Origin: Schmidtea nova
Taxonomy: Eukaryota
DNA length: 43,205 nt
Direction: 5' to 3'
NCBI GenBank assembly: GCA_044892505.1
Contig: CM097883.1
Coordinates: forward strand, 408,352,796-408,396,000
Shown: piece after piece, positions 10,635 through 43,205 of the stretch
Numbering within the stretch: position 1 is the stretch's first letter
Layout: each line of letters begins with the position of its first letter
Position numbers and translations under genes: made by a program
The notes under the pieces: generated by a model
Databases searched by the model: none
Told to the model about the DNA's origin: nothing
The model's input: the letters and a program-made list of their open reading frames with translations, nothing else

Positions 10635-11510
10635 ACCACGAAATTACGAAAAAATGAATTAAATTAGGAAAAGAAAGAATTAATTCGAAAAATAAATCAA
10701 AAATTAATCAAAAATTATTAAATATGAAAATGAATAGAACATTTATTAAAAATATAAAAGCCTATAATAATTGGATAATCAAACCAATTAAAAGCACAGA
10801 TCGGTTCTGATTGGCTGATTGAACGCAAAAATTACTATATAAAGGACGCTCAATCAGCTGTTTTATAAAAATAAACAGCACGTTTTAAAATCACTTTTAG
10901 ACACAGTTTTAAGCACTTTTAGCCGTTATAAAATTCAAACAACGAAATTACGAAAAGAAATTAAATTACGAAAAGAAAGAATTAATTCGAAAAATAAATC
11001 AAAAATTAATAAAATATGAAAATGAATAGAACATTTATTAAAAATATAAAAGCCTATAATAATTAGATAATCAAACCAATTAAAAGCACAGATCGGTTCT
11101 GATTGGCTGATTGAACGCAAAAATTACTATATAATGGACGCTCAATCAGCTGTTTTATAAAAATAAACAGCACGTTTTAAAATCACTTTTAGACACAGTT
11201 TTAAGCACTTTTAGCCGTTATAAAATTCAAACAACGAAATTACGAAAAGAAATTAAATTACGAAAAGAAAGAATTAATTCGAAAAATAAATCAAAAATTA
11301 ATAAAATATGAAAATGAATAGAACATTTATTAAAAATATAAAAGCCTATAATAATTGGATAATCAAACCAATTAAAAGCACAGATCGGTTCTGATTGGCT
11401 GATTGAACGCAAAAATTACTATATAAAGGACGCTCAATCAGCTGTTTTATAAAAATAAACAACACGTTTTAAAATCACTTTTAGATACAGTTTTAAGCAC
11501 TTTTAGCCGT
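10635..11510 (+). repeat. About three tandem 292-bp units, each carrying the CCAAT/TATA module (LTR B)
   Basis: Units at 10927-11218 and 11219-11510 plus a diverged upstream copy; CTGATTGGC...TATATAA in each. Confidence 0.9.
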
Positions 11511-11560
11511 TACTATCAATAACCTAATTTCAACCGTTAGCTACCCACTGTGAGAAATTT

Positions 11561-11609
<49 letters not shown>

Positions 11610-14446: not shown

Positions 14447-14496
14447 AGCACGTTTTAAAATCACTTTTAGACACAGTTTTAAGCACTTTTAGCCGT

Positions 14497-15060
14497 TATA
14501 AAATTCAAACAACGAAATTACGAAAAGAAAGAATTAATTCGAAAAATAAATCAAAAATTAATAAAATATGAAAATGAATAGAACATTTATTAAAAATATA
14601 AAAGCCTATAATAATTGGATAATCAAACCAATTAAAAGCACAGATCGGTTCTGATTGGCTGATTGAACGCAAAAATTACTATATAAAGGACGCTCAATCA
14701 GCTGTTTTATAAAAATAAACAGCACGTTTTAAAATCACTTTTAGACACAGTTTTAAGCACTTTTAGCCGTTATAAAATTCAAACAACGAAATTACGAAAA
14801 GAAAATAAATTACGAAAAGAAAGAATTAATTCGAAAAATAAATCAAAAATTAATAAAATATGAAAATGAATAGAACATTTATTAAAAATATAAAAGCCTA
14901 TAATAATTGGATAATCAAACCAATTAAAAGCACAGATCGGTTCTGATTGGCTGATTGAACGCAAAAATTACTATATAAAGGACGCTCAATCAGCTGTTTT
15001 ATAAAAATAAACAGCACGTTTTAAAATCACTTTTAGATACAGTTTTAAACACTTTTAGCC
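14497..15060 (+). repeat. Second array of 292-bp promoter-bearing units (one shortened, one full)
   Basis: Copies of 10927-11510. Confidence 0.9.
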
Positions 15061-15112
15061 GTCACTATCAATAACCTAATTTCAACCGTTAGCTACCCAC
15101 TGTGAGAAATTT

Positions 15113-15161
<49 letters not shown>

Positions 15162-16635
15162 CGTTTTCATTTGTGTTCATTCGTGATCTTCATATATAGA
15201 ATTTTTCTTGAGGTTGCGGACGGCCCACAAGTTCGCCAACTTCACTGCGACTCGTCCATTAGACTTGCCTTTAGTGTAGAACGAAAGGAGGAATTTTCGG
15301 ATTTTTCGAGTTAATGATTTATTCCATGGAGGTGTTCGTGGTTTGGTGTTCCTATGGTGACAGATGTATTGAGAATTTAAATAAACGTGTGAGCTAGAAA
15401 ATTACAAAAATTAGCTCAATCGTATTAATTTCAGTTAAATCCAAAACCTTTGAGAAAGGATTAAAATTCCATGTAAATCAGACAGAAGTGAATCTTTGTA
15501 AAATAGATAATTCCAAGTTGATAGTAAATGTCGGATATATTCGTAATTGACAAAATATTTATTCCCATTAAAATTTTAGCAATGACAAATTTGATTGTTC
15601 GTCGGAATTGTAATTAATATTGTTAAATATTGTCATAAGGCCGATGAGCATAAAAATAAACCAACGAAATTAGCGGAAAATTGATACTAAATGTTATTAA
15701 ATAAATTAAATTAAATAAACAGCATAATAAAGCTGGAACATTTTATTTGTTATATGCATTAACATATCTCAAACAAAAAAATAGTTTGAACAACATTTAA
15801 TAATAACTAAACGAAAATCAAATACAAATCTAAATAAATTTATAAATGTTTGTAAAACTTCTCTAAAGCTGTATTCCTTTTTGTCATTGGGATTTCATTT
15901 CCATCTAGTTCCTATAACTGTGATAGAGCTAATATCACTAAATGCCGATAATTGAAAATTTTTGCGATGGGGTTTTGAAGAAGGCTTAAGCTTCTCAACT
16001 TGAAATATATTTTTAATGGATAAATATCTTTAGGATTCTCTATTTTATTAAAATCCAAATTTTATATCACCATATTTCGGAGAGAGAGAGAGGCTAGTTG
16101 TAGATAAAATCGTTTTGACTCCCCTGCATCTATAATTTCAAGGTTTTTGTTTTTCTTAATTCTGCTTTTTCTAATTATGATTTTTTCCAGTCATCCAGTT
16201 TGTTGATCCCCAAAGATGGTCTGTGGTTTTTTCCTGTAGACGTTGTAAAATTGTTTGATGTCATCGTATCTAGAACAAATCTTTGTAATAAAATTAATCT
16301 ATCAAAGATAATTCATAAAGATTATATACTAACTCTGTAAAATGAATACGTTTAATAATCTGATAATCAAGACTCTTTGGTGTTACTAAATATTTATAAT
16401 CTAATAATATTTCATCAGTATCTTATTGCTTAAATTTCCTATAATTTATACCATTTCAATTTCACCTTTTTTTCTTTCAATTTTACCTTTTTTTCTTTCA
16501 ATTTCACTTTTTTTCTTTCAATTTTTTTCTTTCTTTCATTCAATTTTTTTCTTTCTTTTTCTATTTCTTTCTATTTCAACACATTTCAAATATTTTAAAA
16601 ATCAAAAAATTGACTATCGAATTTATTGATGATTA

Positions 16636-17190
16636 AGGCAGACCAGCCGCACAGTTTGTAATGTTATGAAATACCCTGCAAAATCTGCTGCGGTAACATT
16701 CTCTACTTCCGACAAAATAAGTTCGGAAAGTTCATTTGATTCGGCCATTCGTAACCGAGAAAGTGTTTTCAATTGAACGTGTAACCAAATTCTTCTGTAA
16801 TTCTTTGAAGTTCGTCTCTTTTATGAACTCTAGCATCGTCAAGAATCAAACATACTTATTCCATATTTAGGTTATTACGTTTTTATAATAGGACCGACTT
16901 TCCATTTTTAACAATCAAAAACAAATTATATTTATGATTATTATTAATATAATTCTGAAATAAGGTAATAAATAATAAAGGTAGTCAAATTTACTTGGAT
17001 TACATATTTCTTTCGAATAATATGGTAAATATAATATGAAAGTATTGTCAAGAATCAAACATACTTCTTCCATATTTAGGTTATTACTTAAATATTGGCA
17101 CAATTCCAAAACATACTCCGAAAATACATTGGCATTTATTGTAGAATTTGTGATGTTTTTACAAAAACACATCTGATTTATTGACATACT
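16636..17190 (-). pseudogene. Tc1/IS630-like DDE transposase relic, duplicate copy 2
   Basis: Paralog of 13085-13620; retains a short segment deleted in copy 1. Confidence 0.6.
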
Positions 17191-17742
17191 GACATATCTG
17201 ACCTACCTCTAATTGTTGGTATACTTATATTTGCTCTTGTTCCTTTGCGTAAAGAATAAATGTCAATTTAATATTTTAATAAACTTTAAAAATAAGAATA
17301 GATAAAAAACCAACAAATTTGAATTCAAAAAGAAGAAAAAAGGGTGAAATAAAATAGAAATGGTATATAAACATTATTTGCTATCATGTAAATTTTTATA
17401 AATTTAAATATAAAATTATAAAATTAAATATTTTCAAATTTCAAATCACTATTAACAAAAACTGGATCAGAATTAGAAGTTTCCCCACAAAATTAACAGA
17501 ATTAAAAGTTTCCCCCAGGTAATTTAAAATTACAAATTAAATAAATTGAATTATATATTACAGAAAATATTATTATTTTAAATTAAACCAAGTTATATAT
17601 AAAGTAAAAAGGGCGACGCTCTAGTGTATGTCGCCCGAAAATTTTAAATAAAAAAATGAATTTTAAATTATAATGTAAAACTAACAACATATATTTATTC
17701 AAAAATAAACTAAATAAGTATTAACAACAGTAACAATCAGAT

Positions 17743-18603
17743 TTATTCACCGATATCGTACTTCGAAGCAACCAACCGCCTAAATATAATCAAAATATCC
17801 TCTTTGTCAACATTTTGTCTTGAAAGCCACAATCGAAAATCCAGAAAATTAATCTTTTGTTCAATACTCATTCCTCGCCTTTTCCTCATGTCCACCTTAA
17901 TGTTTCCCCACCGTCCTTCCATTTTATTGGTATAGACATTGGTTACTGGATCTTTGAACCAGAGCTTGTGATTAACGGACAAATGTATATAATTTTGATT
18001 TTCCAAATTTTCAAGGTTATAAGTTTCCTTCCAATAAGCGGGCCACCTATCACTGTAAATAATGCTGTTCGGCTTAACAAATTTCTCAATTAAAGCAATT
18101 AGTGTTTCTCGGCTTCGCTCAAGCACAATTTGTCCAAACCATTTTTTGGTACCTCGTTCGGTTCCTCCAAATAGCCATATTTCAGGATAGCGTCTTCCGC
18201 GATAATATTTCCATTTTTTTGAAATCAAAGTTTCGTCAATTTCTACTATTACGCCATTAGGACCGTCCGACATTTCAAGTAAAGATTCCGAGCACACCTC
18301 ATACAAGAAATTATTCCAATCAGAAATTGTTTGGTTAGCCATGCCAATCATAGACTGTATCCTGTTTGTGGGAATATCTCGCAGTCAAAAATACGTGAAT
18401 AATACCAGTTTTTTGAGTGGCATTCTGCTTTTTTCAAAAAAAACTGTCTTTGCGAATAGAAACTTGACTGCATTTCCTCGGACATTGAAAAACAAAACCG
18501 TCACTAGTTTGTGCCCTCTTTATCAAGGACATGTTACTTCCACAGCGACAAATTTTTGTCGTTGCAATTAGGTGGTGCGTTTGAAGATAGCGAATTATAC
18601 GTT
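17743..18603 (-). pseudogene. Merlin transposase with one frameshift and one stop upstream of the 202-aa open part
   Basis: VEIDETLISKKWKYYRGR, WLFGGTER, IYSDRWPAY, VNHKLWFKDP, TNKMEGRW; N-terminal CRCGSNM...FQCPRKC..SIRKDSFF/EKSRMPL. Confidence 0.9.
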
Positions 18604-18631
18604 CATTTTTTTTATTTTAAATTATTTAAAA

Positions 18632-18660
18632 CTAGCTGTTGTACCCGGCGTTGCCCGGGT
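18632..18660 (-). mobile_element. Helitron 3' terminus (hairpin plus CTAG|T)
   Basis: Minus strand ACCCGG-GCAACG-CCGGGT hairpin, then ACAACAG and CTAG followed by T; canonical Helitron end. The 5' TC end was not identified. Confidence 0.7.
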
Positions 18661-18664
18661 TTTT

Positions 18665-19640
18665 TTACTGTGTCACAACTCCAGGATTCTTGCTGTCTTT
18701 TGCTTTGGCAAACCTGTAAGCTGCTATTAATAAACTAAAAAAATGTTCATGGTTTTGATTTGCATGAGCTATTTTGATATGTCTGTTAAAATGATTTTTT
18801 CTTGAAAAACTGTTGTGGCAAATATGACACTGAAATCTTTGTTGCTTTTCATGCACTGTTTTTGTATGTGAAAGCAGATTATTTCTTTTTCCAAATGTGA
18901 TTTTGCAGATTGAACATTCAAATGTCTTTTGTTTTTCATGCACTATTTTTGTGTGTGAAAGAAGATTACTTCTCTTTCCAAATGTTTTTTTGCAGACTTG
19001 ACATTCAAATGTCTTTTGTTTTTCATGTACTGACTTTATGTGTGAAAGAAGATTGTCTTTTCTTCCAAATTTTTGGTTACAGATTGAACACTCAACAGGT
19101 TTTTGTTCTTTGTGAATTGCTTTGGTGTGGTTTAGAATACGTTTTTCTCTTTCCAAGCCTGTATTGCTACTTTTACGTTTCAAAATTTGGTTATGATCTT
19201 TTATCTGCTGATCACTGTAATTTGTAGAATCCTGAAAACAAATAGAAGTTTAATTTTTTTTTAATAAGTACAAAGTGAAACGTGCAATATAGGCATCTAA
19301 AAAATACAACTAAAAAGAGAGTCAATTTGGTCCTGGTAATTTGAATTAGACTTTTTGATATTTTCAACTCTTTTTAATAAAAACTATAAAGACTTTCAAA
19401 TCATTTTTTTAATTGTTTATCCATTAAAGGTTTTCTAAATCATCAGCGTTAAAGTTTTTTTGTCACTTTCGTTGAGTTAAAACTATTAAGAACTTTTTTA
19501 CAATATTTTGCACTAACTTTTTCTAGCTTTTTACGAATTTTATTTGTTAGAAACTTTTCAACAAAACCAAACAAAACACTTGGTCACATAAATTTTTTAA
19601 AACATACAAACAAACAACTAAAATTTAAAAATCTTACCAT
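18665..19640 (-). CDS. C2H2 zinc-finger gene (four full fingers plus a half finger), probably two exons
   Basis: Four CxxC-x12-HxxxxH repeats with HEKQKTFEC linkers. ATG at 19640-19638 is followed by GTAAG; acceptor TTTTCAG at 19232; exon 2 from 19231 is in frame (M|DSTNYSDQQ...). Confidence 0.75.
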
Positions 19641-24904: not shown

Positions 24905-27010
24905 TCTTGGTGTGCTGGCTGATGTTAGTCAACTTGGGATTTTATTGATGTTCGTATTAGGGTAATGCCGCCAACATAAAAATGTCTTTTTTTACATAAA
25001 AGTGTCCTTGCAATGCCTCTTTCATGGCCATCGGACTAAACTAGGTCCACTGTAACTCCTCAATACCTAGACCTTGCTTATTAATCTTACCCTCCAAAAG
25101 TTAGATTCGACGTTGTAGTTGTCACTTTCTGTCGGTATCTACTATTTGTTTAAGTCCTTCCATCTAAAAGAATAATTATAAAACATACATTTTATTGGCT
25201 AAATGGGATCATCCTATCCTTGTTCCTTTACAATTCAGGTCTAGTTTTCGCTATATTTATGATTCAATATTGATCCTGAAGTACTCTCTTCCCTTTACAC
25301 CACTCGTCGACATCGTCTCTAATATCTTCCTTATCGATTATTTGTCAAGCATGCCGCAATCATACGTTTTCAACCATGCAGATCACCATCCGTACGTATT
25401 CTTCATGTTACCTCAAGCATCCAAAATCCTCACAGATACTTCATTCATACAAAAAGTAAATAGAAGTCATAGCCCCAATTGTATTCAGTAATACTTAAAA
25501 ACAAACGAACAACAAAATGCAATGCTACGAGCGATTATTGGTTAGTTACACGTTGATTTAAATCCCACCCGTTAACTCTCGGGATCTGATAAGGTCCCTT
25601 CCTGGGAAGCGGTGGCTTCTTACTTGAGAACTCCGTTTGCTCGATAAAGCTCCGGATTCAGAGTCCAACAGACCCTCGAATTATATAGGAAAATCTCATA
25701 GACTTGAATATTTTGGGCCCACTGAGAGGAGTATCGCCAATCTGTTGAAAATGCGAAAGGAAGGTTTGAGAACTCCTGTGGCTCTTCGGTGTCTAGTCTT
25801 CTGGGACGATCTAGAAGAACATATCCTATTCGATGTAAGTCGCGTGTCGGAATGCGATCACCCAGCGGGGTGTCATTTCGTTATCGCGAAGAATGATAAA
25901 CCATTTGCGATGTTGATGTTTGAAATTTATCGATGGTCAGAGTGGTCCACCTTCGAACCATTTTTCCTCTGAGGGTTTTTCCCATAATTTGAAGGGTGCC
26001 TTGACAATGAATTGGCTACGCCATCGCCATCGCCGTGCTTGTCGGTGTGGATCGTTAAGCACACCTGCCGGGGCCTGTTTGGGAGGCCAGATTCCGTATT
26101 TGTTGACCTTTCCGTTTCAGCAATAGAGATGTTGACGATTTCGCATTATCTTAGAGATAGATTGCTTGCTGTCGAGAATGGGGGTTCGGTTTGTAGAGAG
26201 ATCGTTTGACGTGTAGGTCTTCTGATGCGTGAATTTGGTAATGTCTTCTGGCTACTCTACTATAAAAATGGCCAATATCCCTTATGACTATGTCTCCTTA
26301 CTTAATCGTGATTGAATCAGTCGATGAGTGGTACTGAATACATTATTCCATAACTTTATTGCGTCATTGATGTGATTTACTACTTCGTACTGCTAGGTAC
26401 TGCAAGGTGAGCGAATGAGTTACACCAGCGATCGGTTAACTTTTTTAACCATTACCCCAAAATATTTTTGCGTAAGTCGATATTATCCCCCCACCCATTC
26501 TGAAAAGAAAACAATCAATGTAAATTTTAAATAAACATTATTTATTAAATTAATTTACATTTACATATTTATAAAAAAAGTTACATGAAATAGCAATTTA
26601 AATATTAGAAAAATTTCCCTATTACCCAAAAATTTTTCATTTTTACCCCACTTGGGGTAATTTACCCCGGTTCCCCGACCGCTGAGTTACATTGTCGTGA
26701 AAGTCATATTTCAATCATTGGTAGGTTACGAACTATTTGTATTCACTCTATTTTCACAAATTCTACCAATTTCCTCTTTGGGTGACAACTTTCTATCTCT
26801 TATTGTCGACTCTCATATACTCTCAATTGTTTTTTCTTCCTTTTTATCTTCTGGGAGCTGATTCGTTTCCTTTTCTTAATTATAGTTTTCGGTTCAACCG
26901 ATGTCTCGCCTGAGTCTTCTTTCTGAATGGTGGTAGGGTACCATTTGGATAGAGTCATGGGCCGGATTAGTTCTGGTAGGTAATCAGCCACGAACTACTG
27001 GGTGATGTAA
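24905..27010 (-). mobile_element. Truncated LTR-family unit E
   Basis: Terminus TCTTGGTGTGCTGG...CAACTTGGG matches the A terminus; GATGTTCGTATTAGGGTAATGCCGCCAACATAAAAATG matches D; carries a coiled-coil ORF fragment; promoter end missing. Confidence 0.6.
26426..26684. mobile_element. hAT-type MITE, 259 bp
   Basis: TIR CAGCG(A/G)TCGG; 8-bp TSD AGTTACAC/AGTTACAT; TTACCCC subterminal repeats. Confidence 0.75.
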
Positions 27011-27012
27011 AA
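26800..27012 (-). pseudogene. C-terminal fragment of the coiled-coil/basic-tail ORF, copy E
   Basis: YITQ*FVADYLPELIRPMTLSKW...KKRKRISSQKIKRKKKQ vs F YLTQELSQLIRPITYQHW...KKKSKMGARQRR. Confidence 0.6.
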
Positions 27013-27184
27013 TTAAATCAAATTAAACAATTATTAAAAAACAGTATTAACAAGTTAGATGTCAAATCAAACAAACCAAATCAAAAACGAAAATACAACA
27101 TTAATATTACATTATATTAGTATATTCGTCCTAATCACGATCTTGATAATATCAACTTCAATACGGCTTGAGAAAATGTCTAAG

Positions 27185-27262
27185 GTTCCTCCGAATAATA
27201 TACCTATGAATAATATTCTTACGAATTATATACCTATGAAATATATTCCTATGAATAATTTT
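27185..27262. repeat. Degenerate 15-bp minisatellite (TATACCTATGAATAA-like)
   Basis: About five units; explains the PNNIPMNN peptide in the ORF track. Confidence 0.7.
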
Positions 27263-28078
27263 CAGTCAAAATATTTGGGTTAGGTGTCTAGATAACTTAC
27301 ACGTATCTTTAAATATTTACTTTTTTCAAGCACACACACCTTTAAAGGTATGACCATTCATTACAAGGGTTGACTTTATTTAACCTTTAAAAATAATAAT
27401 TTAAAATTTGACCTTGAAAACGATGGTGATTTTTGTTCTTTGTTATGAGTCATGTCTTTGTTATTTTATACCAAAAGATACTTTTAAAAAATCAAAAGAT
27501 GAAATATACTTCGAAAATAAAATTAATTTTAAATTACAAATAAATCTACAAATTTTAGATAATTGGGCTTCTTATTAAATAAAGATAAGAAAAAATCAGT
27601 AAAATTGTAACACAATAAAATGTACAAAACATTCTACAATAGATAAAGCGTGTTGACCTGATTGAGAGGAAAATATTGGTGCGTTACTTATTCTGCAATT
27701 ATAACACTTGAATTAAAACTATTAAATACTGGAATGATAAAAATAAAACAAAATAAGAATAAAATTACCATAAATTAACAAAACGTAATCGAGAGCAGTG
27801 AAGCCTGAAACAAAATGATAAATTTAAGAATGAGTAATAAAAATATACCAATTGAAAATCACGCGAGCAGAACGAGAGAGACGAAGTAAATGACTAGGCC
27901 ACTCAAGAATGACAGCGCGTGGGTGGACAACAGAGTGAGTCACCGGGTATGACAATAACCAAAAATAAAGATATTGATAAAAAAAACTCAATGCATAAAT
28001 TAACATTAAGAAAAATAATCATAAAGCAACAACCAATTAAAAATAAAATACCGGACAATTTCACAAACATATTGAATC

Positions 28079-28131
28079 CTGATTGGCCGGCCCAAACCAA
28101 AAACTACTATATAAGCAGTGGTTAAATCAGT
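28079..28131 (+). promoter_or_regulatory. Inverted CCAAT box plus TATA box (unit C)
   Basis: ATTGG at 28082, TATATAA at 28108 (26 nt). Confidence 0.7.
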
Positions 28132-29184
28132 TGAAGTAGTGTCATTTTACTGACTTAAAGACATATGGAAATTGTACCTGTATCAACGAGAATTTGTGAA
28201 AATAAAGGTATGTTCATGATCATTTAGTTGTGTTGTTATACGTCCCGAAGGTCTCCGGACCCGACGGGTGACAATGGGTCTCTCGTAGCAACACCTTATG
28301 GGTGATGGCCGATGCGGCGGAGGAGCACCAATAAATGTGGGAGAGGTTGCGCATAGGATTGTCCGAAGTAGTGTCGTGAACACTAGTAGAGATATCCCTC
28401 CAATTTCAGAAACATTTCTTTTTCAATGAACATAACAGCTCGATTTATCATCAAGGGAAAGGGAATTTAACAATGCCACTCGCATTCATAGGAATCACTA
28501 CATGCAGAAATTTTTACCCAAGTGCAATATGGGAGCGACAATAGAGATCCGCACCAAAATACCCCGACATGAGGTGGAAGGAATGTCAGGGGAAATGTTT
28601 GATATGATACAGTTGATGGTGTTTGGTTGATGTACTGATTGATGGTGTGATACATGAATTGAACGCGCCAACTACCGTAGGAAATCAGAGGAGGTAGGGC
28701 GAATGCATGAGGCTTGAAATGTTTTCGGTCGACGGCACCACTGGATGAAAGGCTGCTTGTCGACGGATTGGAGTATACATAAGAGTAATTTGACGTATAA
28801 AAAGGCAGATCTGACCGCTGAGTGCTGAAGTTTGTTGAAAATATCTAGTGAGTGAACAACAATTGTAGTTGAATGCAGACCGAGATCAGTGCATAATAAG
28901 TCACGGTTGAGCGTAGGCTACCACACAATACAGAACCATGGCTGAATGGTTACAGTGATAATTTTCTGAATTACTGTAGGAATGAGTGCTGTTGTGATTG
29001 AAAGAATGAGGATGCGTGGAAAGGGACAATGAGAAATGAATGTTGTATGGAATTTTCTAAATAAGGAATGATGTGATGAAGGGAAATTAAAAGACTATAT
29101 GACGGGATCGAAAGAATAAGTGGTGTGGGGTATATAAACTTAGCGAAATATCTTGAGCGTATAGAATTGCGACCGGAACAAATC

Positions 29185-29340
29185 CACACAGGTCTTCTAT
29201 CGGCAGTGGTGAACCCGTAAATTTTACCTGCCGTTAGACTACAACGCTAGATGCATTACTAACATGATGAGCAATTAGGGACGAGTCATGGGCATCAGCG
29301 GGAGAATGTTAATGTGGGTGGGATTGCCCTAATATTAACA
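29185..29340 (+). ncRNA. Conserved structured RNA element, copy C
   Basis: CTTCTATCGGCAG...CTGCC; CATGAT/GTCATG stem (29263-68 with 29285-90), 16-nt loop with ATTAGGG complementary to CCCTAAT at 29327. Confidence 0.65.
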
Positions 29341-30042
29341 TCAAGAAATATCCATGTTAAACATCAACCAACAAATCAGCATGGTGGTTTTGTGTAATAA
29401 CAAATGAAATAAATTTTATTGAATTGAAAATTTGAAAATGTATAGTTGACATTGTCATCGCAGAGACACCCAATCTTCGTTCTTCAGATATTGTAATGAC
29501 TTTTCTACCCAATCCGGATCGACTCTTTCTTGCTTGATTGTCATGTTGACTTTTGTATTTTAAAATGTCATGCTTCGTAGAAATCATAGTATTTGTAATG
29601 TTACTATAAAATAATATATATGTCTATCAATTTACTTTTATTTTATTTAATATCATGTTTATAATAATATTAATTTTTTGAATTAAAATTTATACATCAG
29701 ACACAAACATTTATTTAAACCAATTTTGAAAACGAAATTTTTATGTTTTATAATTTTAAATTTATAAAGTTATTTTAAATTTATAAAACGGAAATTAATT
29801 GGAAATTAGTATTTACAATATTTTAAAATGAAAAATTGTAAATAAAAACGCCTCTGATTGTATGGGGCAATTAACTCATTACATGCAAATTTATCCCAAA
29901 TGAACCTTTACAATTAAATCGGTTAATCTATGCGCAAAATGGACAGGAACCGGAACTCAGATAATTTCCATCCAATTGAATTACAGTTATGTTTAAGATA
30001 TAGACATAATCTGTTTCATTAATTTTCTTATTACAATTGATA

Positions 30043-32998: not shown

Positions 32999-33160
32999 NN
33001 NNNNNNNNNNNNNNNNNNNNNNNNNNNNNNNNNNNNNNNNNNNNNNNNNNNNNNNNNNNNNNNNNNNNNNNNNNNNNNNNNNNNNNNNNNNNNNNNNNNN
33101 NNNNNNNNNNNNNNNNNNNNNNNNNNNNNNNNNNNNNNNNNNNNNNNNNNNNNNNNNNNA
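32999..33160. other. Assembly gap (162 N)
   Basis: N run. Confidence 1.
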
Positions 33161-34180: not shown

Positions 34181-34311
34181 CATTAACAAATAACAAACAG
34201 ATAATGAACAACTTTTATAATAACTTTATTTAACAAAAAAAATACAATTAATGTCTACTCACGATAAAAAAAATCAAATGTTTTGAATAATCTTCTGTTT
34301 ATTCTATAATA

Positions 34312-34974
34312 TAGGGTTTCCCTTTCGTTAGGGACAATTTCCCTACCAAAAGTAACAGTTTTCCTATCAATATGATAATTTTCCCTATCAATAGTAACAT
34401 TTTCCCTATTAATAAGGACTTCCGTAAATTAAAATTATGAAATTTAAGATACCAATCCTTGATTTATTGATATGTAAAGAAAGGGATGGGTATACACCAT
34501 AAAAGTGTATATGGTATAAAAGTGCATATGTAGCATCATTACCGAGGATTGGATGAATTAATTCAAAGAGATAATATTAATTTGTTTTTCTTGCCACCAT
34601 ATTCACCGATGTTAAATATTATCGAAAATTGTTTTTCAAATTGGAAAAATAATGTTGCAAGGTCTGAGGTTACATCTGAGGTGGAGTTATTTCGCCAAAT
34701 AAACACTGTATTTCAAACAATAACAACCGAGGATTGTAATGGATTTTTTTAAGAAAAATGCTGAGGTATTTCGAACGCTGTAGAAATCGTGAAATATTTA
34801 TTGAATAAAATCATATATGATAATCTCATTTTTATTCTTTACTTTATGTATTTCATTTTATTTGTTACTTTTATATTTTTTAATTATTTCCATAATGATA
34901 GGGAAAATGTCCGATTTGATAGGGAAATTGTTACTTTTGGTAAGGAAATTGTCCCTAACGAAAGGGAAACCCTA
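34312..34974 (+). mobile_element. Tc1/IS630-like internal-deletion derivative, 663 bp
   Basis: TIR of about 50-60 bp starting TAGGGTTTCCCTTTCGTTAGGGACAATTTCC, TA flanks, transposase remnant inside. Confidence 0.85.
34549..34790 (+). pseudogene. DDE_3 transposase C-terminal fragment
   Basis: FLPPYSPMLNIIENCFSNWK is the Tc1/IS630 YSPDLNPIE motif. Confidence 0.85.
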
Positions 34975-36554
34975 TAATTGCTTCATCGATTTTTTTAAAA
35001 ATTTTATTATTATTCATACTACAATGATATAACAGATGTAATTTTAATGATTTGTGTGGTTTATTTTCCGCTGTAGTTAATTTATATTTTTGTGTTTGCC
35101 ATTATAATATGAATTCAAATTCTAAATTTGAATTTGGCTTGCTATAGTAAATTACAAAGAATACAAAAAACCAATCTACAAATTAACAAATGAAAAGTCT
35201 ATTGAAGGAAGCTAAATTATTTAAGAAGACACTCAATATAAATTAAATATCAGAAACTTCGAATTATCAACCAAAAGAAACCAAATTGTCGAAAAGAAAG
35301 TAATCTAATCAAAGAAGTGGAAAACCCATTTATCATAAGTATTTTTTTGAAAATCCTAAAACGTAATAATGCGTGAGTGTTATTATTATAAATAAATTTT
35401 ATCATTTCTCATTGTAATTTTTTATTCAATTATAAAATTATACACTCATTCATACAAGCACGCATACTTAACCCACATTATAGAAATAACATTCACCCTA
35501 GCAGTCCAGGCACACTTTTACAGGAGACTCGCTAGGCTCTACATTTTCTCAATACACTGTCAATAAACTAACATATAATAAATATCGACACAATTACAAC
35601 AATCGTAACGATAATCAAGACAGATAATAACAGTCATATATTAAAAGATAATAAAAGATACACACACAATAAAAGGGGATTCACAAAAAGGGGAACCTGA
35701 ATTCAAAAATTTTACGAACACTATCGACAAAACAAAACAGAATTATCTCATTAGTACACTACAATAATGTTAAAAGTTGAAAATAGCATTCATTACCTAA
35801 AAATGACAGTCAGATTTACACGTGGAAATGTTTCGTCGCTACTGTTTACCGCCTGGGAGGATTTCTTGTGACAGATCGAAAGTCACATGTTTTTTTCTGT
35901 TTTAAATAATCGAAATCGGAAAAAATACAAACAACCAGCACATTTTACTGAAATGTTTTTTATTCAAACATAAAATTCCTGATTTTTTCAAACATTTAAT
36001 TTACAAAAAAATTTTGAACCCTATCAAAATTTTTTTTTATTATTTATAAATAAGTTTTCCTTGTTATTATTGACAGTAACTAGTTTTTTAATTCATTTAA
36101 ATTTATAATTTTTCTATATAATAATCTATTGATAACATAAAAAGGATGACATTAATTAGTAATTAAATTATTAACCAAAAATATCATATAATATGATAAT
36201 CTGAAAAAAATGCAAACTACCTTCATGTTTTACTGAAATGGTAAATCAAACCTTTTTTCTAAAAAAAAATTAACAAAATGTAATTTAGAATAATTATAAT
36301 TTAGTTTGCCTAACTATCTTTTGATAACAGATAATTCGTTTAAAACCATTGAGTTATGTTACAACAATCGGTTCCATTTAAAGATCTATTATCCATAAAT
36401 ATAGAGTGATCACTTTTAAATAGTCATGTATATTCTGAAATAAATAACACATTTATTGAATTACGCAATATACAGTGAACTGCTTCACCTTTGGTCTTTG
36501 GTCTCTAATGTTGGCGGTCTGGATTGGGTTAAAACAAAAATAGTAAATTAAACA

Positions 36555-36755
36555 AAACGCTCTAGGGATTCCTCCATCCAAAACCTTAACATAAAATGCT
36601 TACATATCACACGAGCACCCTCGATCATTTCCCTGTAATAATCGAGTTGGAAATGTGCAAGGTGTTTGAACAATGATGGGCAGGTGAGCTCTATTGCTAA
36701 AACTACTCCCCATTTATGTTCACGGGTTCGTCTCGCTGCCGATAGAAGGACTTAC
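36555..36755 (-). ncRNA. Conserved structured RNA element, copy F
   Basis: Minus strand CTTCTATCGGCAG...CTCACCTGCC; CTCGAT/ATCGAG stem with 15-nt loop whose AGGGA complements downstream TCCCT. Confidence 0.65.
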
Positions 36756-37074
36756 GCTTTAACTTTAATCTATCCGCATCCATTGTCTCTCATTTCAATT
36801 ATTTCTTTTCGGCCCCCTGTCTTTATAATAATTCAATTTTTCTTTCAGCGCCCTTCTTTACAATATCAACAAATAATCTTTAGTCAATTTCAATATATTA
36901 TCTCTTTAATGTTTCTATTGTTTATTAGATTTATGTTAATCCTATTGTTAATTCTAATTTATGTTTAATTTATTTGAAATTTTTAATAAATTACTTTATC
37001 TCATATACGTTACAATAAAATAAATACAAAACAAAAATTATTTAATAAGCGAAAATAACTAAATCACAGAATTT

Positions 37075-37668
37075 CTATTCAAAGTATTTGGTAATGTCTT
37101 CATCCGATATTGCAAAGTTCATTGTTAGATCAATCTCGGGAATCTCTTTTGACTGTTGTGCCAATTGCTGAAGAACTTGTTTCTTCCAGCGACGCTGGCG
37201 CGCTCCCATCTTGCTCTTCTTCTTCCTTTTACCTTCTGGATTTGTCGTGTTCTTTGGTGTACTTGCTGCTATTGTTATTGCGCGAACCTGAGATGGTTCC
37301 TCGGTGTTCGTTCCTTTTGTGCATCCTGCTTTCTCGTCAGCCCAATGCTGATAAGTGATTGGTCGAATGAGCTGGCTGAGCTCTTGAGTTAAATACGACG
37401 CCGTTACAGATTTTAGACATTTCTTTAGTTCCATCTTCGTCGCGTCCAATTCCATTTTGATCTCCTCGTTTACTCGCTGTGAGCGTTGATTTTTTATAAT
37501 TTGTGTTTTCATCTGCTCTGGACTGAACCAGCTTTTCTTCAGGTTTGAGATTATGCCATCGGCTTCTTTTATTTTTTCAGATTTCCGTAACATTTCTTTT
37601 TCCAGGCTTCGAATTATCCTCCATGCTTTATCCAATTCGGCTTGATTAGTTGCTGTGTTGGCTGACAT
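37075..37668 (-). CDS. Uncharacterised 197-aa coiled-coil protein with Lys/Arg-rich tail, encoded inside the LTR
   Basis: Intact ATG-to-stop frame preceded by an acceptor-like TTTTAG; homologous to three decayed copies in this window. Confidence 0.75.
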   Translation of the reverse strand: MSANTATNQAELDKAWRIIRSLEKEMLRKSEKIKEADGIISNLKKSWFSPEQMKTQIIKNQRSQRVNEEIKMELDATKMELKKCLKSVTASYLTQELSQLIRPITYQHWADEKAGCTKGTNTEEPSQVRAITIAASTPKNTTNPEGKRKKKSKMGARQRRWKKQVLQQLAQQSKEIPEIDLTMNFAISDEDITKYFE

Positions 37669-37795
37669 TCTCTAAAATTCAAGATGGTTTATTAACATAA
37701 ATTGGTTGTGTTGATTTGAACAATTCTCATTCTTTCGACGACTGTTAATTGTTAATTCAGGAAGAGAAAATGATTTACCTATTACACTTTCAACA

Positions 37796-37932
37796 CTGTC
37801 GCTATGTACAGCGATCAGATACATTTATTTCATAATATATTTTATTTGTTCACACCTGTGCTATGTACAGCAATCAGGATACGAAATAATTTAAACAAAA
37901 CTAAGATCTGCTGCCCTATATACAGGATTCAG
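37796..37932 (-). repeat. Three spaced short hairpin repeats (loop AT(G/A)TAC on +)
   Basis: CTGTCGCT-ATGTAC-AGCGATCAG, CTGTGCT-ATGTAC-AGCAATCAG, CTGCTGCCCT-ATATAC-AGGATTCAG. Confidence 0.65.
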
Positions 37933-38390
37933 GATAAGCAATTATATTTAATTATTTATGTGGAATGTTTGATCCTATAGCCTATTGCTGCTATGTTACT
38001 TGCGTAGTAGATCACTACGCTATTAAATTATCGATTTTTGAAATGGTTATGTTTTAAAAAATGTATTATGTACAAATTCTTAACCGTGTATCTGCCGCTT
38101 TATGCCCACAAACCCCAGATGTGACAATCGAAAAATATATATTAACACTCGGTGAATTCAAAAGAAAAATCAGATTGATAAAATCACAGTTACATCTGTA
38201 TCAACTAAAATCAAACTCTCCTCAACTATAACTCAAAAAATCAAATCGGTTATAAAATAAAACTTCAACTGGTTATACTATCCAGTGAAAAATCATGGTT
38301 AAAATAAAAATTCCTACCCTCTTCACGGCGCTTTACACCGGTCGGACGGCCTAACTGTACGGAGCAGTCATTCTACTCGGCACAGTATGC

Positions 38391-38685
38391 CTCCATTTCA
38401 CCGATTGCACGGTGATCGGAGCCCCTTGAATCATACGTATTTTTCTACTATATCTACTGTATATAAATAATATATATTCGCCTCCTTCCACTGATTGCAC
38501 AGTGGAAGAAGCTCGACCCAAAAATTACTTCTAAAAAATATATACTTGTAAGTAATGGTTAGCATACTACACTAAGGTTGTCTCCTTCCACCGATTACAC
38601 GATGGAAGAAGCTCAATAAAAGATAGATAAATAGATATATAGATATCGTCTTCTCCTTCCACTGATTGCACAGCGGAAGAAGCTT
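38391..38685 (-). repeat. Four spaced ca.32-bp hairpin repeats (loop ATT(G/A)CA on +)
   Basis: Starts at 38391, 38482, 38582, 38653; consensus CTCCTTCCACTG-ATTGCA-CAGTGGAAGAAGCT. Confidence 0.85.
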
Positions 38686-38897
38686 AAGTTTAATTCTAAA
38701 TTCAAATAGAATATAACATATTCAAAAAGGAAGTTTTATTAGTTTAATTTAAATAACTACAATGGCTAATGACAGAATTTCATAATAACAATTTATAAAT
38801 TCAAGAAAAATAAAATATTCATACCTAGTAGCTTCTCACAAAATTTGTATATAACAATACAAAGAAAAAATTTTTCAATCATAAAAACATTAAAAAT

Positions 38898-38952
38898 ATC
38901 TGAATCTGGATCAGTATTTATACTGACCAGATCAGTTCATTGACCAATCAGC
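38898..38952 (-). promoter_or_regulatory. Inverted CCAAT box plus TATA box (unit F)
   Basis: ATTGG starts at 38948 and TATAAATA at 38922 on the minus strand (26 nt); the TATA sits in the centre of a palindrome at 38906-38930. Confidence 0.7.
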
Positions 38953-39414
38953 ATCAATCTGATGGTCATCAATACAATTCTATTAAAAATAAAATCAATT
39001 TTATTAACAAATATGATTTTCATTTTCTTGTTTTAATTTACCGAATTTTTATTAATTCTTCTTCTTTTTTACTTATTTATTTCGCTTTCTTATTATTTAA
39101 ATATAATTAAATATCACTTTCTTTAACGTTTTTACATTATCCATTTACTTTCTTCAAATATTTGATATTAAATTAATATTCTTTATTACATTTTAATTCG
39201 TTTTATACTGATATTTCTCGTAATTATATTCATTTAATTTGTTCCTATTTATTTCTTATTATTATTATTTTTTATGTTAAATGTGGACCAAATGGTGGAT
39301 CCAACACTAATGCAATATCATTACTCTCCAATTCTTAAGATTGATGCCATCTCTTTAACCATTTGATTCGTCGGTGCTGCGTTGTATCTGGATATCATCT
39401 TGATCTGACACAAA

Positions 39415-39950: not shown

Positions 39951-40694
39951 TATGTTATCGTTTCATTAAAAAGTGATTTATGATTATTCTGATCGATAAA
40001 CTGAAACGCTTCCAACTTGATATCAGACGAATCTTTTAATTAAAATGAGTTCGAAATTGTTAATTGACAGAAATAAATAAAACTCGATTGAATCTTAGTA
40101 GGATAACAAAAAAAATTACCATTGTAAATCTTAGACTTTAATGGATTATTTTTGCAACATGTTTATATTTTATGATATGGATTCCAATAATGTTACTCGA
40201 TATAGAATGTATTTGTGTTGATATTGTACTTTTAAATAGTTCATATTTTTTTAAATTTTCTAGAAATTAGGCTTCATCCAATTTACTGATAATCAAAATT
40301 TATTTAGTGTAGCTACTGAAAAATTAATATAAATACATTGAAAAATTCATTTTTTATGAAATTTTGGAAATTTTTCATGCTCTAAAAGCTTTATAAATTT
40401 AATGATTCGAGAAGCATGGAAATAAGGCGCTGATCTACTGGAATATTCAAAAATGATTAAGATAGACCATAATCTACTAAATCCACTTTCATTTTCATTT
40501 TCCATCCTTTGGTAATCTTCATTTGAGTCATTTTTTAAATCGATATATGTTGAATCATCCAGTTTTTCATCGTCATCTATCAAATAATATACTTAGTCAT
40601 ATGAAAAGTTATCTAAATCAAAATCATCGGTTAAAAGTTATCCGTTAGATATGCTGGTTCGTTGGTTTGGTCTTAAAACTAAGGTTATTACTGA

Positions 40695-40885
40695 TGTTAG
40701 TATTAGGGCAACCTCACCAACATAAAAATATTCCCCTCGCTGATACCTGTGACTAGTCCCTAATTATTCGTCATGTTGGTACTGTATCTAGCGTTGTAGA
40801 ATGATGAGGCAGGTGAGCAACCTTGTGGCTACTATTCTCTCATTTATCTACGGGTCCACCACTACCGATAGAAGGTCTATGTGGA
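40695..40885 (-). ncRNA. Conserved structured RNA element, copy D
   Basis: Minus strand CTTCTATCGGTAG...CTCACCTGCC; TGAC/GTCA stem with 16-nt loop, ATTAGGG complementary to CCCTAAT. Confidence 0.65.
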
Positions 40886-41069
40886 TTTGTTTCAGTCCCT
40901 ATTTCCTTCATTCACTAGTCAATTTACATCTAGGGTTCTAGTTAATTATTCGCCTTCGGCCTTCCGGAAAAAAGAATTGTGTGAATCTCATGTCCTTTAC
41001 TTAAACATTCATTTCATCATCCATAACTCATCAAATGATTAAACAGACACAAGACATTTCGGCATTTTA

Positions 41070-41628
41070 TTAGGCTAACAACACCTTTGGATTAATTACA
41101 TTTAATAATTGTCGTTCTGACAGCCCGCTCAACAAGTCTACTTCGATGCCCATTCGCTTGGCATAAGCGCGTCTTTCTCGTCGGCGTTTTGCTCCTAACC
41201 TGTTTCTCTTTTTCGTCTTGGCGTTTGCTACTGTCGTTCCGGTTTGAATATCATTATTCATGAACAAGCTGTTTGTCTGATTTTCGGTTTGGGTCTCAAT
41301 ATTTACACTCCGCGACGTAACCCATCTGTCGAATGTGGCCGCCCGGATCTGATCTTTCAGGTATTCTGAGATAAAGTTGGCCGAAACTGTCTTGAGACAG
41401 CGATTCAATTCTACTCGGTAGCCGCCAGTTCAATTGATTTTTCGTTGAGGGCGCGCTGAGTACGATCCTTTCCTTTTAAGATCTCCTTAAAGGCGGCGGG
41501 CAAAACCAGCTCCGTCGGAATTTCTCTAAATCTACACTTTGCCTATTTACCGTTCCTTCCAGGAGACGGATACGTCGACGCATTTGTTCAATCTCCTCGT
41601 CCGCTATTGATTTAGGTAGGGGCTCCAT
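41070..41628 (-). pseudogene. Coiled-coil/basic-tail LTR ORF, copy D (two frameshifts)
   Basis: MEPLPKS...RRIRLLEG...RRSWFCP/AAFKEILKGKDRTQRALNEKSIELAAT/RVELNRCLKTVS...IRAATFDRW...KKRNRLGAKRRRERR; aligns to F KKSWFSPEQMK...SQRVNEEIKMELDATKMELKKCLK. Confidence 0.8.
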
Positions 41629-42583
41629 TTCCTAGAATGGAAACATGCTCATGTTATTATTTTAACGGTTAAAATGATTGATCGTCACTCTCATGTAAAT
41701 GCGTTGAATCCACAGCGAAACCCAAATTTATCTCATCTTTCACCCAATACTTGTCATCAATATACTCTCACATGCATCCCTCCCTCACAGACTCGTTTGG
41801 CATACTTAATCACTCCGAGTTACTACCTTTCGTATTTCAACTCATTCAGACGCAACATACAAATTACAACAATTTCCGAGAGACAATCAATTTATTTAAT
41901 AATTTTTTGATCTACACTGATCATAGCATTTTCATCGGGCTTTCCCGGGAACGCCTGAGGCTCCAATTCTGATCGTATTCGCTATCGCTCCGTTGAATAC
42001 CGTTTGCGTACTAGAGGTCTGGGTTTGGGTCCCAACACAATTGTCACTTGTATAGAAAGACCTCTTTCCATTCGACACCTGCTGCCCAAATTGAACTTTT
42101 CTCGCTCGAGGCCGGTGCTCCGGTTGGTAGATTGGTATATGGGGTCAGTTCTCTGGTGACCAGATTCCGTGGTCGCTCCAAAATTATGTATCCCAAACGG
42201 TGGATTTCGGTCACTGCTATTGGCTGAAAATGGATTAACCATCAGGGTTTTTCAGAAGGTTCCTGCATTTCGATGAACCTATTCAATTTACCCGAAGGGG
42301 GTTGGCGGGTTTCTAGCGGCCAATGGGAGTCACCTTCCCGTGGCAGCTTGATTCTTCATGACGTTTCGCTGGAAAAGAATCACGATATATCGTGCGTTCT
42401 ACGCCAATGGCGCAAATGCCTCTTTAAGTCGTCCTGGAGTCGTGTTGGCGCGTGGTTTAACGCTAGGATAATTAAAAATGAACGAGCGGGGTCATCCTTC
42501 CACTTCGCGTCTTTACATAGGTTAAAATTCAAGTACTAAGATTTATAATAATTTAGTTACTATAAATTTCATTCCAAATAGAA

Positions 42584-43205
42584 ATGTACAAGTTAGAAAA
42601 TCATGATTTGAGACTTCTTTATTTATTTAAGTGGAAATCGAAGAACAATTCAGTTGAGGCGGAGGGAATATTAATAATGCTTTTGGGAGCAATACAGAAT
42701 GAAAGAACTATTAAGTTGGTTTTAGAAATTTGATGACGGCGAAATTATATCGAAAATATGCCTCGTTGTAGACCCAATATCAAGCTGTCGGAGGAAGATT
42801 TTCGTGAAGCTGTTGCTTAAAGATCAACAAGGTCTGTTCGAGAAATTGCTATAGATCTGTCTGCCTCCTAAACAACCGTTCATGGCAATCAAGTTAATTG
42901 GAATGGTCAAAATGCTTCAAAAATGGATCTCACATGAATTGACTGAGTTGCAGAAATTAAACAGATTCCAAACTTGCTTATCCCTTCAAGCACGACATCG
43001 AAAGTCATCTTTTCTTAATAATATAATTACCTGCGATGAAAAATGGATTCGTAAGCGGTTAGGAGAACGGTTGGATAAACATCAATTCCCAAATCAGTTT
43101 CCAAAACCGGAACTTCGCCAAAAGAAAGGCCTTTAAGTGAAATCGAAGAAATGGAAGTTCAATGATTCGGAGGAAATAAAATTGACAGTTATCACTTTCT
43201 TGGAC
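42584..43205 (+). pseudogene. Mariner (DD34D-type) transposase relic running off the window
   Basis: N-terminal HTH region (LRLLYLFKWK...NINNAFG), RSVREIA, KWISHELTE.QK.NR...C, IITCDEKWI; multiple stops and frameshifts. Confidence 0.88.

What the first reader, a model, noticed from the sequence alone, without database searches (positions are those of the whole stretch)
36509..39306. Family of 1.7-3.3 kb LTRs that each carry their own expression unit (promoter, gene, structured RNA)
Seen: F has TGTTGG...CCAACA ends and a perfect CTAA TSD; A (7024-10366) has the same ends with a 3/4 TSD; C, D, E and probably B are divergent or truncated relatives. Shared layout: A-rich tract, CCAAT/TATA module, variable interior, coiled-coil ORF (A, D, E, F), structured RNA, then a TG(T/C)TG(G/A)-N3-(G)YTGG terminus. 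Known: TG...CA ends with 4-bp TSDs typify Ty3/Gypsy solo LTRs, and LTR-borne genes are rare (MMTV sag, HIV nef overlapping U3). Inference: a complex Gypsy lineage, possibly related to giant planarian retroelements, leaves behind solo LTRs that are self-contained genes and spread a protein plus a cis-RNA.
Basis: partly seen in the sequence, partly recalled or inferred. Interest (0 to 1): 0.9.

Follow-up and report, generated by a model that had tools for sequence, protein, structure and literature searches.

The report
Gene-carrying mobile units, probably solo LTRs
The window holds six old, very divergent copies of a 1.5-3.3 kb mobile unit with retrotransposon-type ends, each built as a small two-exon gene plus a conserved end-domain; they are probably solo LTRs, but no paired copy or gag-pol partner could be found to prove it.

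Summary
F (36509-39306) has TGTTGG...CCAACA ends and a perfect CTAA duplication. A (7024-10366) has the same ends and a 3/4 duplication.

Six copies (A, B, C, D, E, F) share some or all of these parts:
- a 5' end motif and an A-rich tract;
- an invariant CTGATTGG box followed by a TATA box (8 sites against 0.01 expected);
- a short leader exon with a GT donor, and a variable interior that reads as an intron, with an AG acceptor just before the ATG;
- a gene for a helical, arginine-rich protein of about 200 aa;
- a conserved end-domain of 260-290 nt that stops exactly at the terminal CA.

Only F keeps the gene intact. A, E and C are broken, and D has no trace of it, contrary to the finding. Codon-position differences show the protein evolved under purifying selection.

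The end-domain has compensatory base-pair changes, but its folding energy is ordinary.

No relative of the protein or of the DNA was found in any library.

None of the six copies is paired or sits next to a primer-binding site, a polypurine tract, or proven gag/pol. "Solo LTR of a Gypsy-type lineage" is therefore the best reading (about 0.5) but unproven. The link to planarian elements was not tested.

The parts
36509..39306 (-). Unit F, complete and the youngest-looking copy (2798 bp); its gene runs on the minus strand
   Evidence: TGTTGG/CCAACA ends read; intact ORF; purine-rich sense strand, 31.9% GC against 26% in the background
36505..36508 (.). Left copy of the 4-bp target-site duplication CTAA of F
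   Evidence: chance estimate
39307..39310 (.). Right copy of the 4-bp target-site duplication CTAA of F
39293..39306 (-). 5' end motif of F (TGTTGG-RYCMRCCA), shared with A and B
38975..39280 (-). A-rich tract of F (T-rich on the plus strand) between the 5' end and the promoter box
38917..38951 (-). Promoter-like module of F: inverted CCAAT box (CTGATTGG) followed by TATAAA
   Evidence: 8 sites against 0.01 expected
38825..38890 (-). Inferred non-coding leader exon of F. The start is inferred about 30 nt after the TATA box. It holds the ATTTTGTGAGAA motif and ends at an AG|GTATG donor.
   Evidence: Read; the motif is shared with A; the donor position matches D and A. Inference, no expression data.
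37672..38824 (-). Inferred 5'-UTR intron of F (the 'variable interior')
   Evidence: GT...AG bounds read; an AG acceptor directly before the ATG is also seen in E and C
38354..38682 (-). F-specific array of four repeated 12-bp-stem hairpins, plus one further unrelated hairpin, inside the inferred intron
   Evidence: fold z = -6.4; absent from the other units
37075..37668 (-). Intact ORF of F, 197 aa: two long helices, a disordered linker, an arginine-rich helix and a short C-terminal helix
36509..36785 (-). Conserved end-domain of F, running to the terminal CA (proposed U5)
7024..10366 (+). Unit A (3343 bp), complete ends, flanks AGTC/CGTC, nested inside B. Contains a 512-bp perfect tandem duplication.
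7506..7542 (+). Promoter-like module of A
9677..10029 (+). Broken homologue of the ORF in A: at least one frameshift, and the N-terminal third is no longer recognisable
10090..10366 (+). Conserved end-domain of A
6412..7023 (+). Unit B, 5' part: same end motif as A, first 97 nt 75% identical to A, then an A-rich tract. Interrupted by A.
10371..11560 (+). Unit B, continuation after A: an A-rich tract and three 292-bp tandem repeats, each with a CCAAT/TATA module. No ORF or end-domain of B was found.
24913..26300 (-). Unit C, an E-like copy with a large internal deletion. It keeps an ORF remnant with several stops and the last ~80 nt of the end-domain. The 5' bound is approximate.
26974..29381 (+). 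Unit D: A-rich tract, promoter module at 28079-28113, leader with a GT donor, end-domain at 29126-29381, no ORF homologue. The 5' bound is uncertain and no target duplication was seen.
40652..42490 (-). Unit E: end-domain at 40652-40935 (77-83% identical to D). The 5' part is cut off by an unrelated insertion near 42490 that runs to the end of the window.
   Evidence: (I2, I3)
41073..41631 (-). Broken homologue of the ORF in E: it lies in three reading frames, so at least two frame changes

Best explanation
The units are solo LTRs, or LTR remnants, of an old and diversified Ty3/Gypsy-type retroelement lineage with unusually long LTRs that hold a complete gene.

Proposed layout in gene orientation (F as the example):
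- U3 runs from the TGTTGG end through the A-rich tract to the CTGATTGG/TATA promoter, about 0.4 kb in F.
- Transcription starts about 30 nt after the TATA box.
- R carries a roughly 65-nt leader exon with a splice donor, a 1.15-kb intron, and a second exon that begins 3 nt before the ATG. That exon encodes a ~200-aa helical protein with an arginine-rich helix.
- AATAAA signals lie at or just after the stop codon.
- The conserved, base-paired last 260-290 nt is U5. It would be kept for cis functions of the element's RNA and DNA ends, such as leader structure and integrase recognition, and it ends in CA.

The protein would be an accessory factor of the element, probably one that oligomerises and binds nucleic acid.

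Shown: the ends, the duplication, the shared modules, the protein-level constraint and the covariation.
Inferred: the LTR identity, the U3/R/U5 assignment, the transcription start, the splicing, the polyadenylation site and the protein's role.
For: - Ends: TGTTG fits the TGTNR pattern reported for the vast majority of Gypsy LTRs (PMC2836005). TG...CA ends with 4-6 bp duplications are the LTR norm (PMC12440569). F has a perfect 4-bp duplication and A has 3/4.
- Boundaries: similarity between copies stops exactly at TG (3 copies) and at CA (5 copies), and the flanks are unrelated.
- Nesting: A sits inside B.
- Size: 1.5-3.3 kb falls within the range of known giant LTRs (1.9-6.5 kb in Ogre; Burro exceeds 30 kb with its LTRs; PMC6431247).
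- Promoter: the box lies 0.35-1.1 kb from the 5' end.
- Composition: every unit is purine-rich on the gene strand (54-58%) and richer in GC than the background.
- Protein constraint: differences by codon position are 29/27/51 and 13/5/26, and pN is 0.35 and 0.17 against saturated pS.
- End-domain: 14 of 32 predicted pairs show compensatory changes, 94.9% of cells pair, and 0 of 500 shuffles reach this.
- Polyadenylation: AATAAA lies at the stop codon in E and A, upstream of the end-domain.
- Decay tracks age: F has a perfect duplication and an intact gene. A has a 3/4 duplication and a broken gene.
Against: - None of the six copies is half of a direct pair.
- No copy is followed by a TGG-type primer-binding site that looks like a tRNA complement, or preceded by a clear polypurine tract.
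- No RT, protease or integrase core is present in the window.
- The integrase-like hit beside F is below threshold (E = 0.013). The 'gag-like' ORF at 5265-5699 has no support from Pfam, PDB, protein search or fold search, and it points away from B.
- An R region of about 1.9 kb containing an intron would be without precedent, to my knowledge.
- The end-domain structure was derived from the same four sequences on which it was counted. Its folding energy is ordinary (z between -1.1 and +0.9), and the sense strand is only slightly better than the antisense strand (112 against 101 of 118 cells).
- No relative was found anywhere outside the window.
Confidence: 0.5

Rival explanations
1. The units are free-standing, non-autonomous mobile gene cassettes, not LTRs. 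Each is a whole element that is moved in trans by an integrase-type enzyme recognising the TGTNR...CA ends.
For: All six copies are solitary, with unrelated flanks. Each unit is a self-contained gene. Integrase-related cut-and-paste elements (Ginger) share TGTNR ends and 4-bp duplications (PMC2836005).
Against: The terminal inverted repeat is only 6 bp, whereas Ginger has 40-270 bp. The targets CTAA and AGTC fit neither CCGG/CCGT nor RTATAY. No transposase is present. No known mechanism copies a unit that lacks terminal repeats through reverse transcription.
Confidence: 0.2
2. The units are LTRs, but the gene lies antisense to the retroelement, comparable to an antisense LTR transcript. The T-rich end would then be U5 and the conserved domain would be the start of U3.
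For: B's 5' end abuts a purine-rich region, 1-6411 read on the minus strand, that holds ORFs on the opposite strand starting about 0.7 kb away.
Against: That neighbour has no proven gag. The sequence next to B's end is not a primer-binding site. The purine-rich strand of every unit is the gene strand, as in the neighbour's own sense strand. G-U pairs favour the gene strand for the end-domain. The integrase-like remnant beside F runs in the gene orientation.
Confidence: 0.1
3. This is a dispersed host gene family made by segmental duplication, not a mobile element.
For: Conserved promoter, intron position, coding sequence under constraint, and a 3' element. Six members cluster within 43 kb.
Against: The ends are sharp and shared. 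F has a perfect 4-bp duplication and A is nested in B. Orientations are mixed, flanks are unrelated, and most copies are broken.
Confidence: 0.07
4. The ends and the flanking repeat are chance matches in AT-rich DNA, and there is no family.
For: The hexamer ends are short, and each hexamer occurs 13-14 times in the window.
Against: Profile hits at E = 1e-58 to 1e-77. Promoter box 8 sites against 0.01 expected. Protein homology at E = 2.5e-21. Only 3% of simulations give a perfect duplication.
Confidence: 0.02

Closest known systems
Solo LTRs of Ty3/Gypsy (Metaviridae) retrotransposons with giant LTRs (Ogre in plants; Burro/GYPSM1 in planarians)
   Same: TGTNR...CA ends, a short terminal inverted repeat, a 4-bp target duplication, kilobase size, an internal CCAAT/TATA promoter, nesting in repeat-rich DNA, and internal tandem repeats.
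   Different: A complete two-exon protein gene lies inside the unit. No paired copy, primer-binding site, polypurine tract or gag/pol was seen. No sequence relation to any described element could be tested, because no eukaryotic genome or repeat library was available.
Genes carried in or overlapping retroviral LTRs (MMTV sag in U3, nef and the foamy-virus accessory ORFs overlapping U3, the antisense bZIP gene of HTLV-1); from my own knowledge
   Same: A protein-coding sequence inside the LTR, so a solo LTR could still express it.
   Different: Here the promoter, intron, ORF and polyadenylation signal all lie inside the unit. The protein matches none of these proteins or any other family (Pfam, PDB sequences, fold search).
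Ginger1 / Ginger2 integrase-related DNA transposons
   Same: TGTNR ends and 4-bp duplications (PMC2836005).
   Different: No 40-270 bp terminal inverted repeats, no transposase, and no CCGG/CCGT or RTATAY target.
Arginine-rich regulator plus structured response element of complex retroviruses (Rev/RRE, Rex/RxRE); from my own knowledge
   Same: An oligomerising helical protein with an arginine-rich helix, encoded beside a conserved base-paired RNA domain at the LTR end.
   Different: This is an analogy only. No homology, binding or expression evidence exists, and AATAAA signals suggest the domain may lie downstream of the gene's own polyadenylation site.

Membership tests
LTR of a Ty3/Gypsy-type retrotransposon (solo LTR) | 5'-TG...CA-3' ends following the TGTNR pattern, with a short terminal inverted repeat | tested here: met
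   A and F have TGTTGG...CCAACA. B has the 5' end only. C, D and E end in CA. Pattern taken from PMC2836005.
LTR of a Ty3/Gypsy-type retrotransposon (solo LTR) | Target-site duplication of 4-6 bp | tested here: met
   F has CTAA/CTAA and A has AGTC/CGTC. A perfect match arises by chance in 3% of simulations. Not determinable for B, C and E; none was seen for D with the guessed 5' end.
LTR of a Ty3/Gypsy-type retrotransposon (solo LTR) | Occurs elsewhere as two near-identical direct copies enclosing an internal region | not testable with these tools
   No pair exists in the window.
LTR of a Ty3/Gypsy-type retrotransposon (solo LTR) | Primer-binding site after the 3' end or polypurine tract before the 5' end of some copies | tested here: inconclusive
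   None is convincing next to any copy. Solo LTRs are not expected to have them. There are no tRNA genes in the window to compare with.
LTR of a Ty3/Gypsy-type retrotransposon (solo LTR) | Association with gag, RT and integrase | tested here: inconclusive
   The only hit is Integrase_H2C2 at E = 0.013, below the cut-off, beside F. The 'gag-like' ORF at 5265-5699 is unsupported.
LTR of a Ty3/Gypsy-type retrotransposon (solo LTR) | Internal promoter and polyadenylation signal that define U3/R/U5 | tested here: inconclusive
   The motifs are present and conserved. Their use is not tested, as there are no expression data.
Ginger1/Ginger2 DNA transposons (non-autonomous derivative) | Terminal inverted repeats of about 40-270 bp | tested here: not met
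   Only 6 bp are inverted at the ends of A and F.
Ginger1/Ginger2 DNA transposons (non-autonomous derivative) | Target CCGG/CCGT (Ginger1) or RTATAY (Ginger2) | tested here: not met
   The targets are CTAA and AGTC/CGTC.
bZIP transcription factors | Basic region followed by a leucine zipper, passing the Pfam threshold | tested here: not met
   bZIP_1 scores E = 0.035, 14.7 bits against a cut-off of 27.6, on the E copy only. The hit was not reproduced. There is no heptad leucine repeat after the basic helix.
Known LTR-borne retroviral accessory proteins | Sequence or fold similarity of the F protein to any of them | tested here: not met
   No hit in Pfam, PDB sequences or PDB folds. The model has a mean pLDDT of 65.8.
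Burro-type giant planarian Gypsy elements | Sequence relation to Burro LTRs or its polyprotein | not testable with these tools
   No comparator sequence was available. Features are known only from PMC6431247.

The most novel reading that the evidence does not exclude
The units belong to an invertebrate retroelement lineage that independently evolved 'complex retrovirus' regulation. The LTR would encode its own oligomerising, arginine-rich nucleic-acid-binding regulator together with a matching structured cis element at the LTR end. A solo LTR would then remain an expressible gene that can act in trans on other copies.
Probability: 0.1. Interest if true: 0.8.

Novelty: new variant of a known kind. 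Interest (0 to 1): 0.5.

Why it matters
LTRs are normally treated as non-coding promoter and terminator modules. If this reading is right, the LTR is itself a spliced protein-coding gene kept under selection. That would mean three things:
- Solo LTRs in this genome are potential genes rather than inert scars.
- The lineage carries an accessory protein with no known relatives.
- Genome annotation of this organism could be missing a whole gene family that is masked as repeats.

It would also be a natural case for studying how long-LTR retroelements organise U3, R and U5.

Tried and rejected
Searches that led nowhere:
- **F against the rest of the window:** blastn found nothing outside F itself. 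The family shows only in profiles, motifs and protein comparison.
- **Protein families and structures for the F ORF and its relatives:** Pfam, PDB sequences and PDB folds gave no hit.
- **Protein databases:** the word-indexed search of 5.8 billion proteins and a profile search of 1.84 billion representatives gave zero hits. Exact look-up of six window ORFs found none in the collection.
- **DNA collections:** a pattern scan of viral and metagenome contigs for the end-domain motif returned 130 loci. All matched only the ~30-nt pattern itself, so they are chance hits. A protein-based scan of viral contigs found nothing.
- **RNA families:** Rfam gave nothing at gathering thresholds for the whole window and nothing meaningful at E <= 1 for F. 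There are no tRNA genes.
- **'gag-like' ORF at 5265-5699:** no support from Pfam, PDB, protein search, or a low-confidence fold (pLDDT 43). It was dropped as evidence.
- **Integrase remnant beside F:** sub-threshold only.

Ideas considered and rejected:
- **E and F as the two LTRs of one deleted element:** rejected, because they share no similarity outside the end-domain and F has its own duplication.
- **Ginger membership:** rejected, because of the missing TIRs and the wrong target.
- **bZIP membership:** rejected.
- **Hammerhead or other ribozyme in the hairpins or the end-domain:** no Rfam hit.

A target duplication and a 5' end for D could not be established.
Full report
**1. What is at the coordinates**

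F runs from TGTTGG (36509) to CCAACA (39306). CTAA lies directly outside both ends. A (7024-10366) has the same hexamers, with flanks AGTC and CGTC.

In first-order Markov simulations of the window, such a hexamer pair 1.5-3.5 kb apart with a perfect 4-bp flank appears in 3% of runs. The motif was picked after seeing the data, so the ends alone are only moderately convincing. The case rests on what the units share.

**2. The family**

blastn of F against the window finds nothing but F. More sensitive comparisons do find relatives.

- **End-domain.** A 260-290-nt domain at one end aligns between A, D, E and F (alignment A1). A profile built from it recovers the four at E = 1e-58 to 1e-77, and finds the last ~80 nt of a fifth copy, C, at 5.6e-12.
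- **Promoter box.** An invariant CTGATTGG (inverted CCAAT box) followed 14-30 nt later by TATAWA occurs 8 times against 0.01 expected. The sites are in A, D, F and five duplicated copies in B.
- **5' end.** A, B and F share the motif TGTTGG-RYCMRCCA followed by an A-rich tract. The first 97 nt of A and B are 75% identical.
- **Protein.** The F ORF has homologues in E (E = 3e-11 pairwise) and in A. A and E are 42-74% identical to each other at E = 2.5e-21 and about 1e-15.
- **Boundaries.** Similarity between copies ends exactly at the terminal TG or CA, and the flanks are unrelated.
- **Composition.** Every unit is purine-rich on its gene strand (54-58%) and has 32-43% GC. The surrounding DNA has 49% purine and 26-29% GC.

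These are therefore inserted units of one old family. A is nested in B.

**3. Anatomy in gene orientation**

The order is: TGTTGG end, A-rich tract (0.3-1 kb), CCAAT/TATA box, short leader, variable interior, ORF, conserved end-domain, terminal CA.

- The leader contains ATTTTGTGAGAA in A and F. It ends at a good GT donor in F, D and A.
- In F, E and C an AG acceptor lies 0-3 nt before the ATG.
- The 'variable interior' is therefore best read as a 5'-UTR intron, 1153 nt long in F. This is inference, as no expression data were available.
- F's intron holds four repeated 12-bp-stem hairpins, plus one further unrelated hairpin, that are absent from the other units (z = -6.4).

**4. The gene**

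- F is intact at 197 aa. A 197-codon open frame is unlikely by chance in DNA this AT-rich (my own rough estimate, not a tool result).
- The homologue in E lies in three reading frames, so it has at least two frame changes.
- The homologue in A has at least one frameshift and has lost a recognisable N-terminal third.
- C keeps only a short N-terminal remnant with several stops and has a large internal deletion.
- D has no detectable homologue, contrary to the finding.

ORF pieces were searched one frame at a time.

Differences between A and E fall by codon position as 29/27/51 over 75 codons and 13/5/26 over 38 codons. pN is 0.35 and 0.17 against saturated pS. The coding region is also the only interior part of the units that is still alignable. 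The protein therefore evolved under purifying selection while the family diversified, and single copies decayed later.

AlphaFold gives two long helices (residues 3-46 and 50-114), a disordered linker, an arginine-rich helix (153-173) and a short C-terminal helix. Mean pLDDT is 65.8. No family, solved structure or fold matches. A bZIP_1 hit on E (E = 0.035) is below threshold and was not reproduced.

**5. The end-domain**

RNAalifold predicts 32 pairs in six helices. Of these, 14 show compensatory double changes and 94.9% of cells pair. No shuffle out of 500 reaches this, and sliding the partners gives 31-38% pairing.

Caveats:
- There are only four sequences, and the structure was derived from them.
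- The folding energies are ordinary on both strands (z between -1.1 and +0.9).
- The gene strand is only modestly better than the antisense strand (112 against 101 of 118 cells).

AATAAA lies at the stop codon in E and A, which is 330-420 nt before the unit's end. The domain may therefore lie downstream of the gene's own polyadenylation site.

**6. LTR or not**

In favour:
- TGTTG fits the TGTNR pattern of Gypsy LTRs (PMC2836005).
- TG...CA ends with 4-6-bp duplications are the LTR norm (PMC12440569).
- The size is within the range of known giant LTRs (PMC6431247).
- The layout of a promoter near one end and a conserved, structured other end maps naturally onto U3, R and U5.

Against:
- All six copies are solitary.
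- None adjoins a credible primer-binding site or polypurine tract.
- No RT or integrase core is present in the window.
- Beside F there is only a sub-threshold integrase zinc-finger match.
- Left of B lies a purine-rich region (1-6411, minus strand) whose 'gag-like' ORF no tool supports, and it points away from B.

Ginger-type DNA transposons share the end pattern and the 4-bp duplication. They require long terminal inverted repeats and specific targets, and neither is present here.

I rate solo LTRs at about 0.5, a free-standing cassette at 0.2, an LTR with an antisense gene at 0.1, a host gene family at 0.07 and chance at 0.02.

**7. Outside the window**

Nothing was found. There were zero protein relatives in two very large libraries, only chance DNA pattern hits and nothing in viral contigs. 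The source organism was not identified. The >70% A+T composition is compatible with the planarian genomes described in PMC11410931, but that is not evidence.

**8. Verdict**

This is a real and well-defined family of gene-carrying mobile units, most likely solo LTRs of a long-LTR Gypsy-type lineage. The gene is genuine and an orphan. The LTR status, the planarian/Burro link and any function of the protein or the end-domain remain open. It is a new variant of a known kind, of moderate interest.

Noticed in passing
34310-34976: Internally deleted Tc1/IS630-like DNA transposon. It has 84-nt terminal inverted repeats (88% complementary) around a DDE_3 fragment at 34534-34749(+) (E = 5.5e-11).
   Followed up: partly
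17743-19183 (minus strand): An ISXO2/IS1595-like transposase ORF (Pfam 6.3e-9) lies next to an ORF with four C2H2 zinc fingers. They may belong to one Merlin-like DNA transposon gene.
   Followed up: partly
10963-18066: A ~3.55-kb tandem duplication at 99-100% identity. It includes promoter-bearing 292-bp repeats and a truncated second copy of the transposase ORF. It is either a recent duplication or an assembly artefact.
   Followed up: no
10671-11554: Three 292-bp tandem repeats, each carrying a full CCAAT/TATA module of the family. The promoter of unit B is triplicated.
   Followed up: partly
3733-4070: A 15-bp minisatellite of about 22 copies (GGGGGATATTGTCC-type) that produces spurious ORFs on both strands.
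   Followed up: no
1800-3300 (minus strand): A ~700-bp tandem repeat with paralogous ORFs (1889-2194 and 2492-2959, 54% aa identity) of unknown function. The whole 1-6411 region is purine-rich on the minus strand, like the family units, and may be the interior of another retroelement.
   Followed up: partly
7736-8547: A perfect 512-bp tandem duplication inside unit A.
   Followed up: no
42500-43205: A sequence that looks by eye like a mariner-type transposase remnant (plus strand) cuts off the 5' part of unit E. Pfam gave no hit.
   Followed up: partly
38354-38682: Four repeated near-identical 12-bp-stem hairpins, plus one further unrelated hairpin, in F's inferred intron, spaced about 70-100 nt apart. 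They are palindromic at the DNA level and their function is unknown.
   Followed up: partly
25623-25880 and 42047-42241 (minus strand): C and E share a further conserved stretch upstream of the ORF (39.7% identity over 58 aa when translated, E = 3e-13). It is unclear whether it is coding.
   Followed up: no
32999-33159: A run of 161 N. It was left as it is.
   Followed up: no
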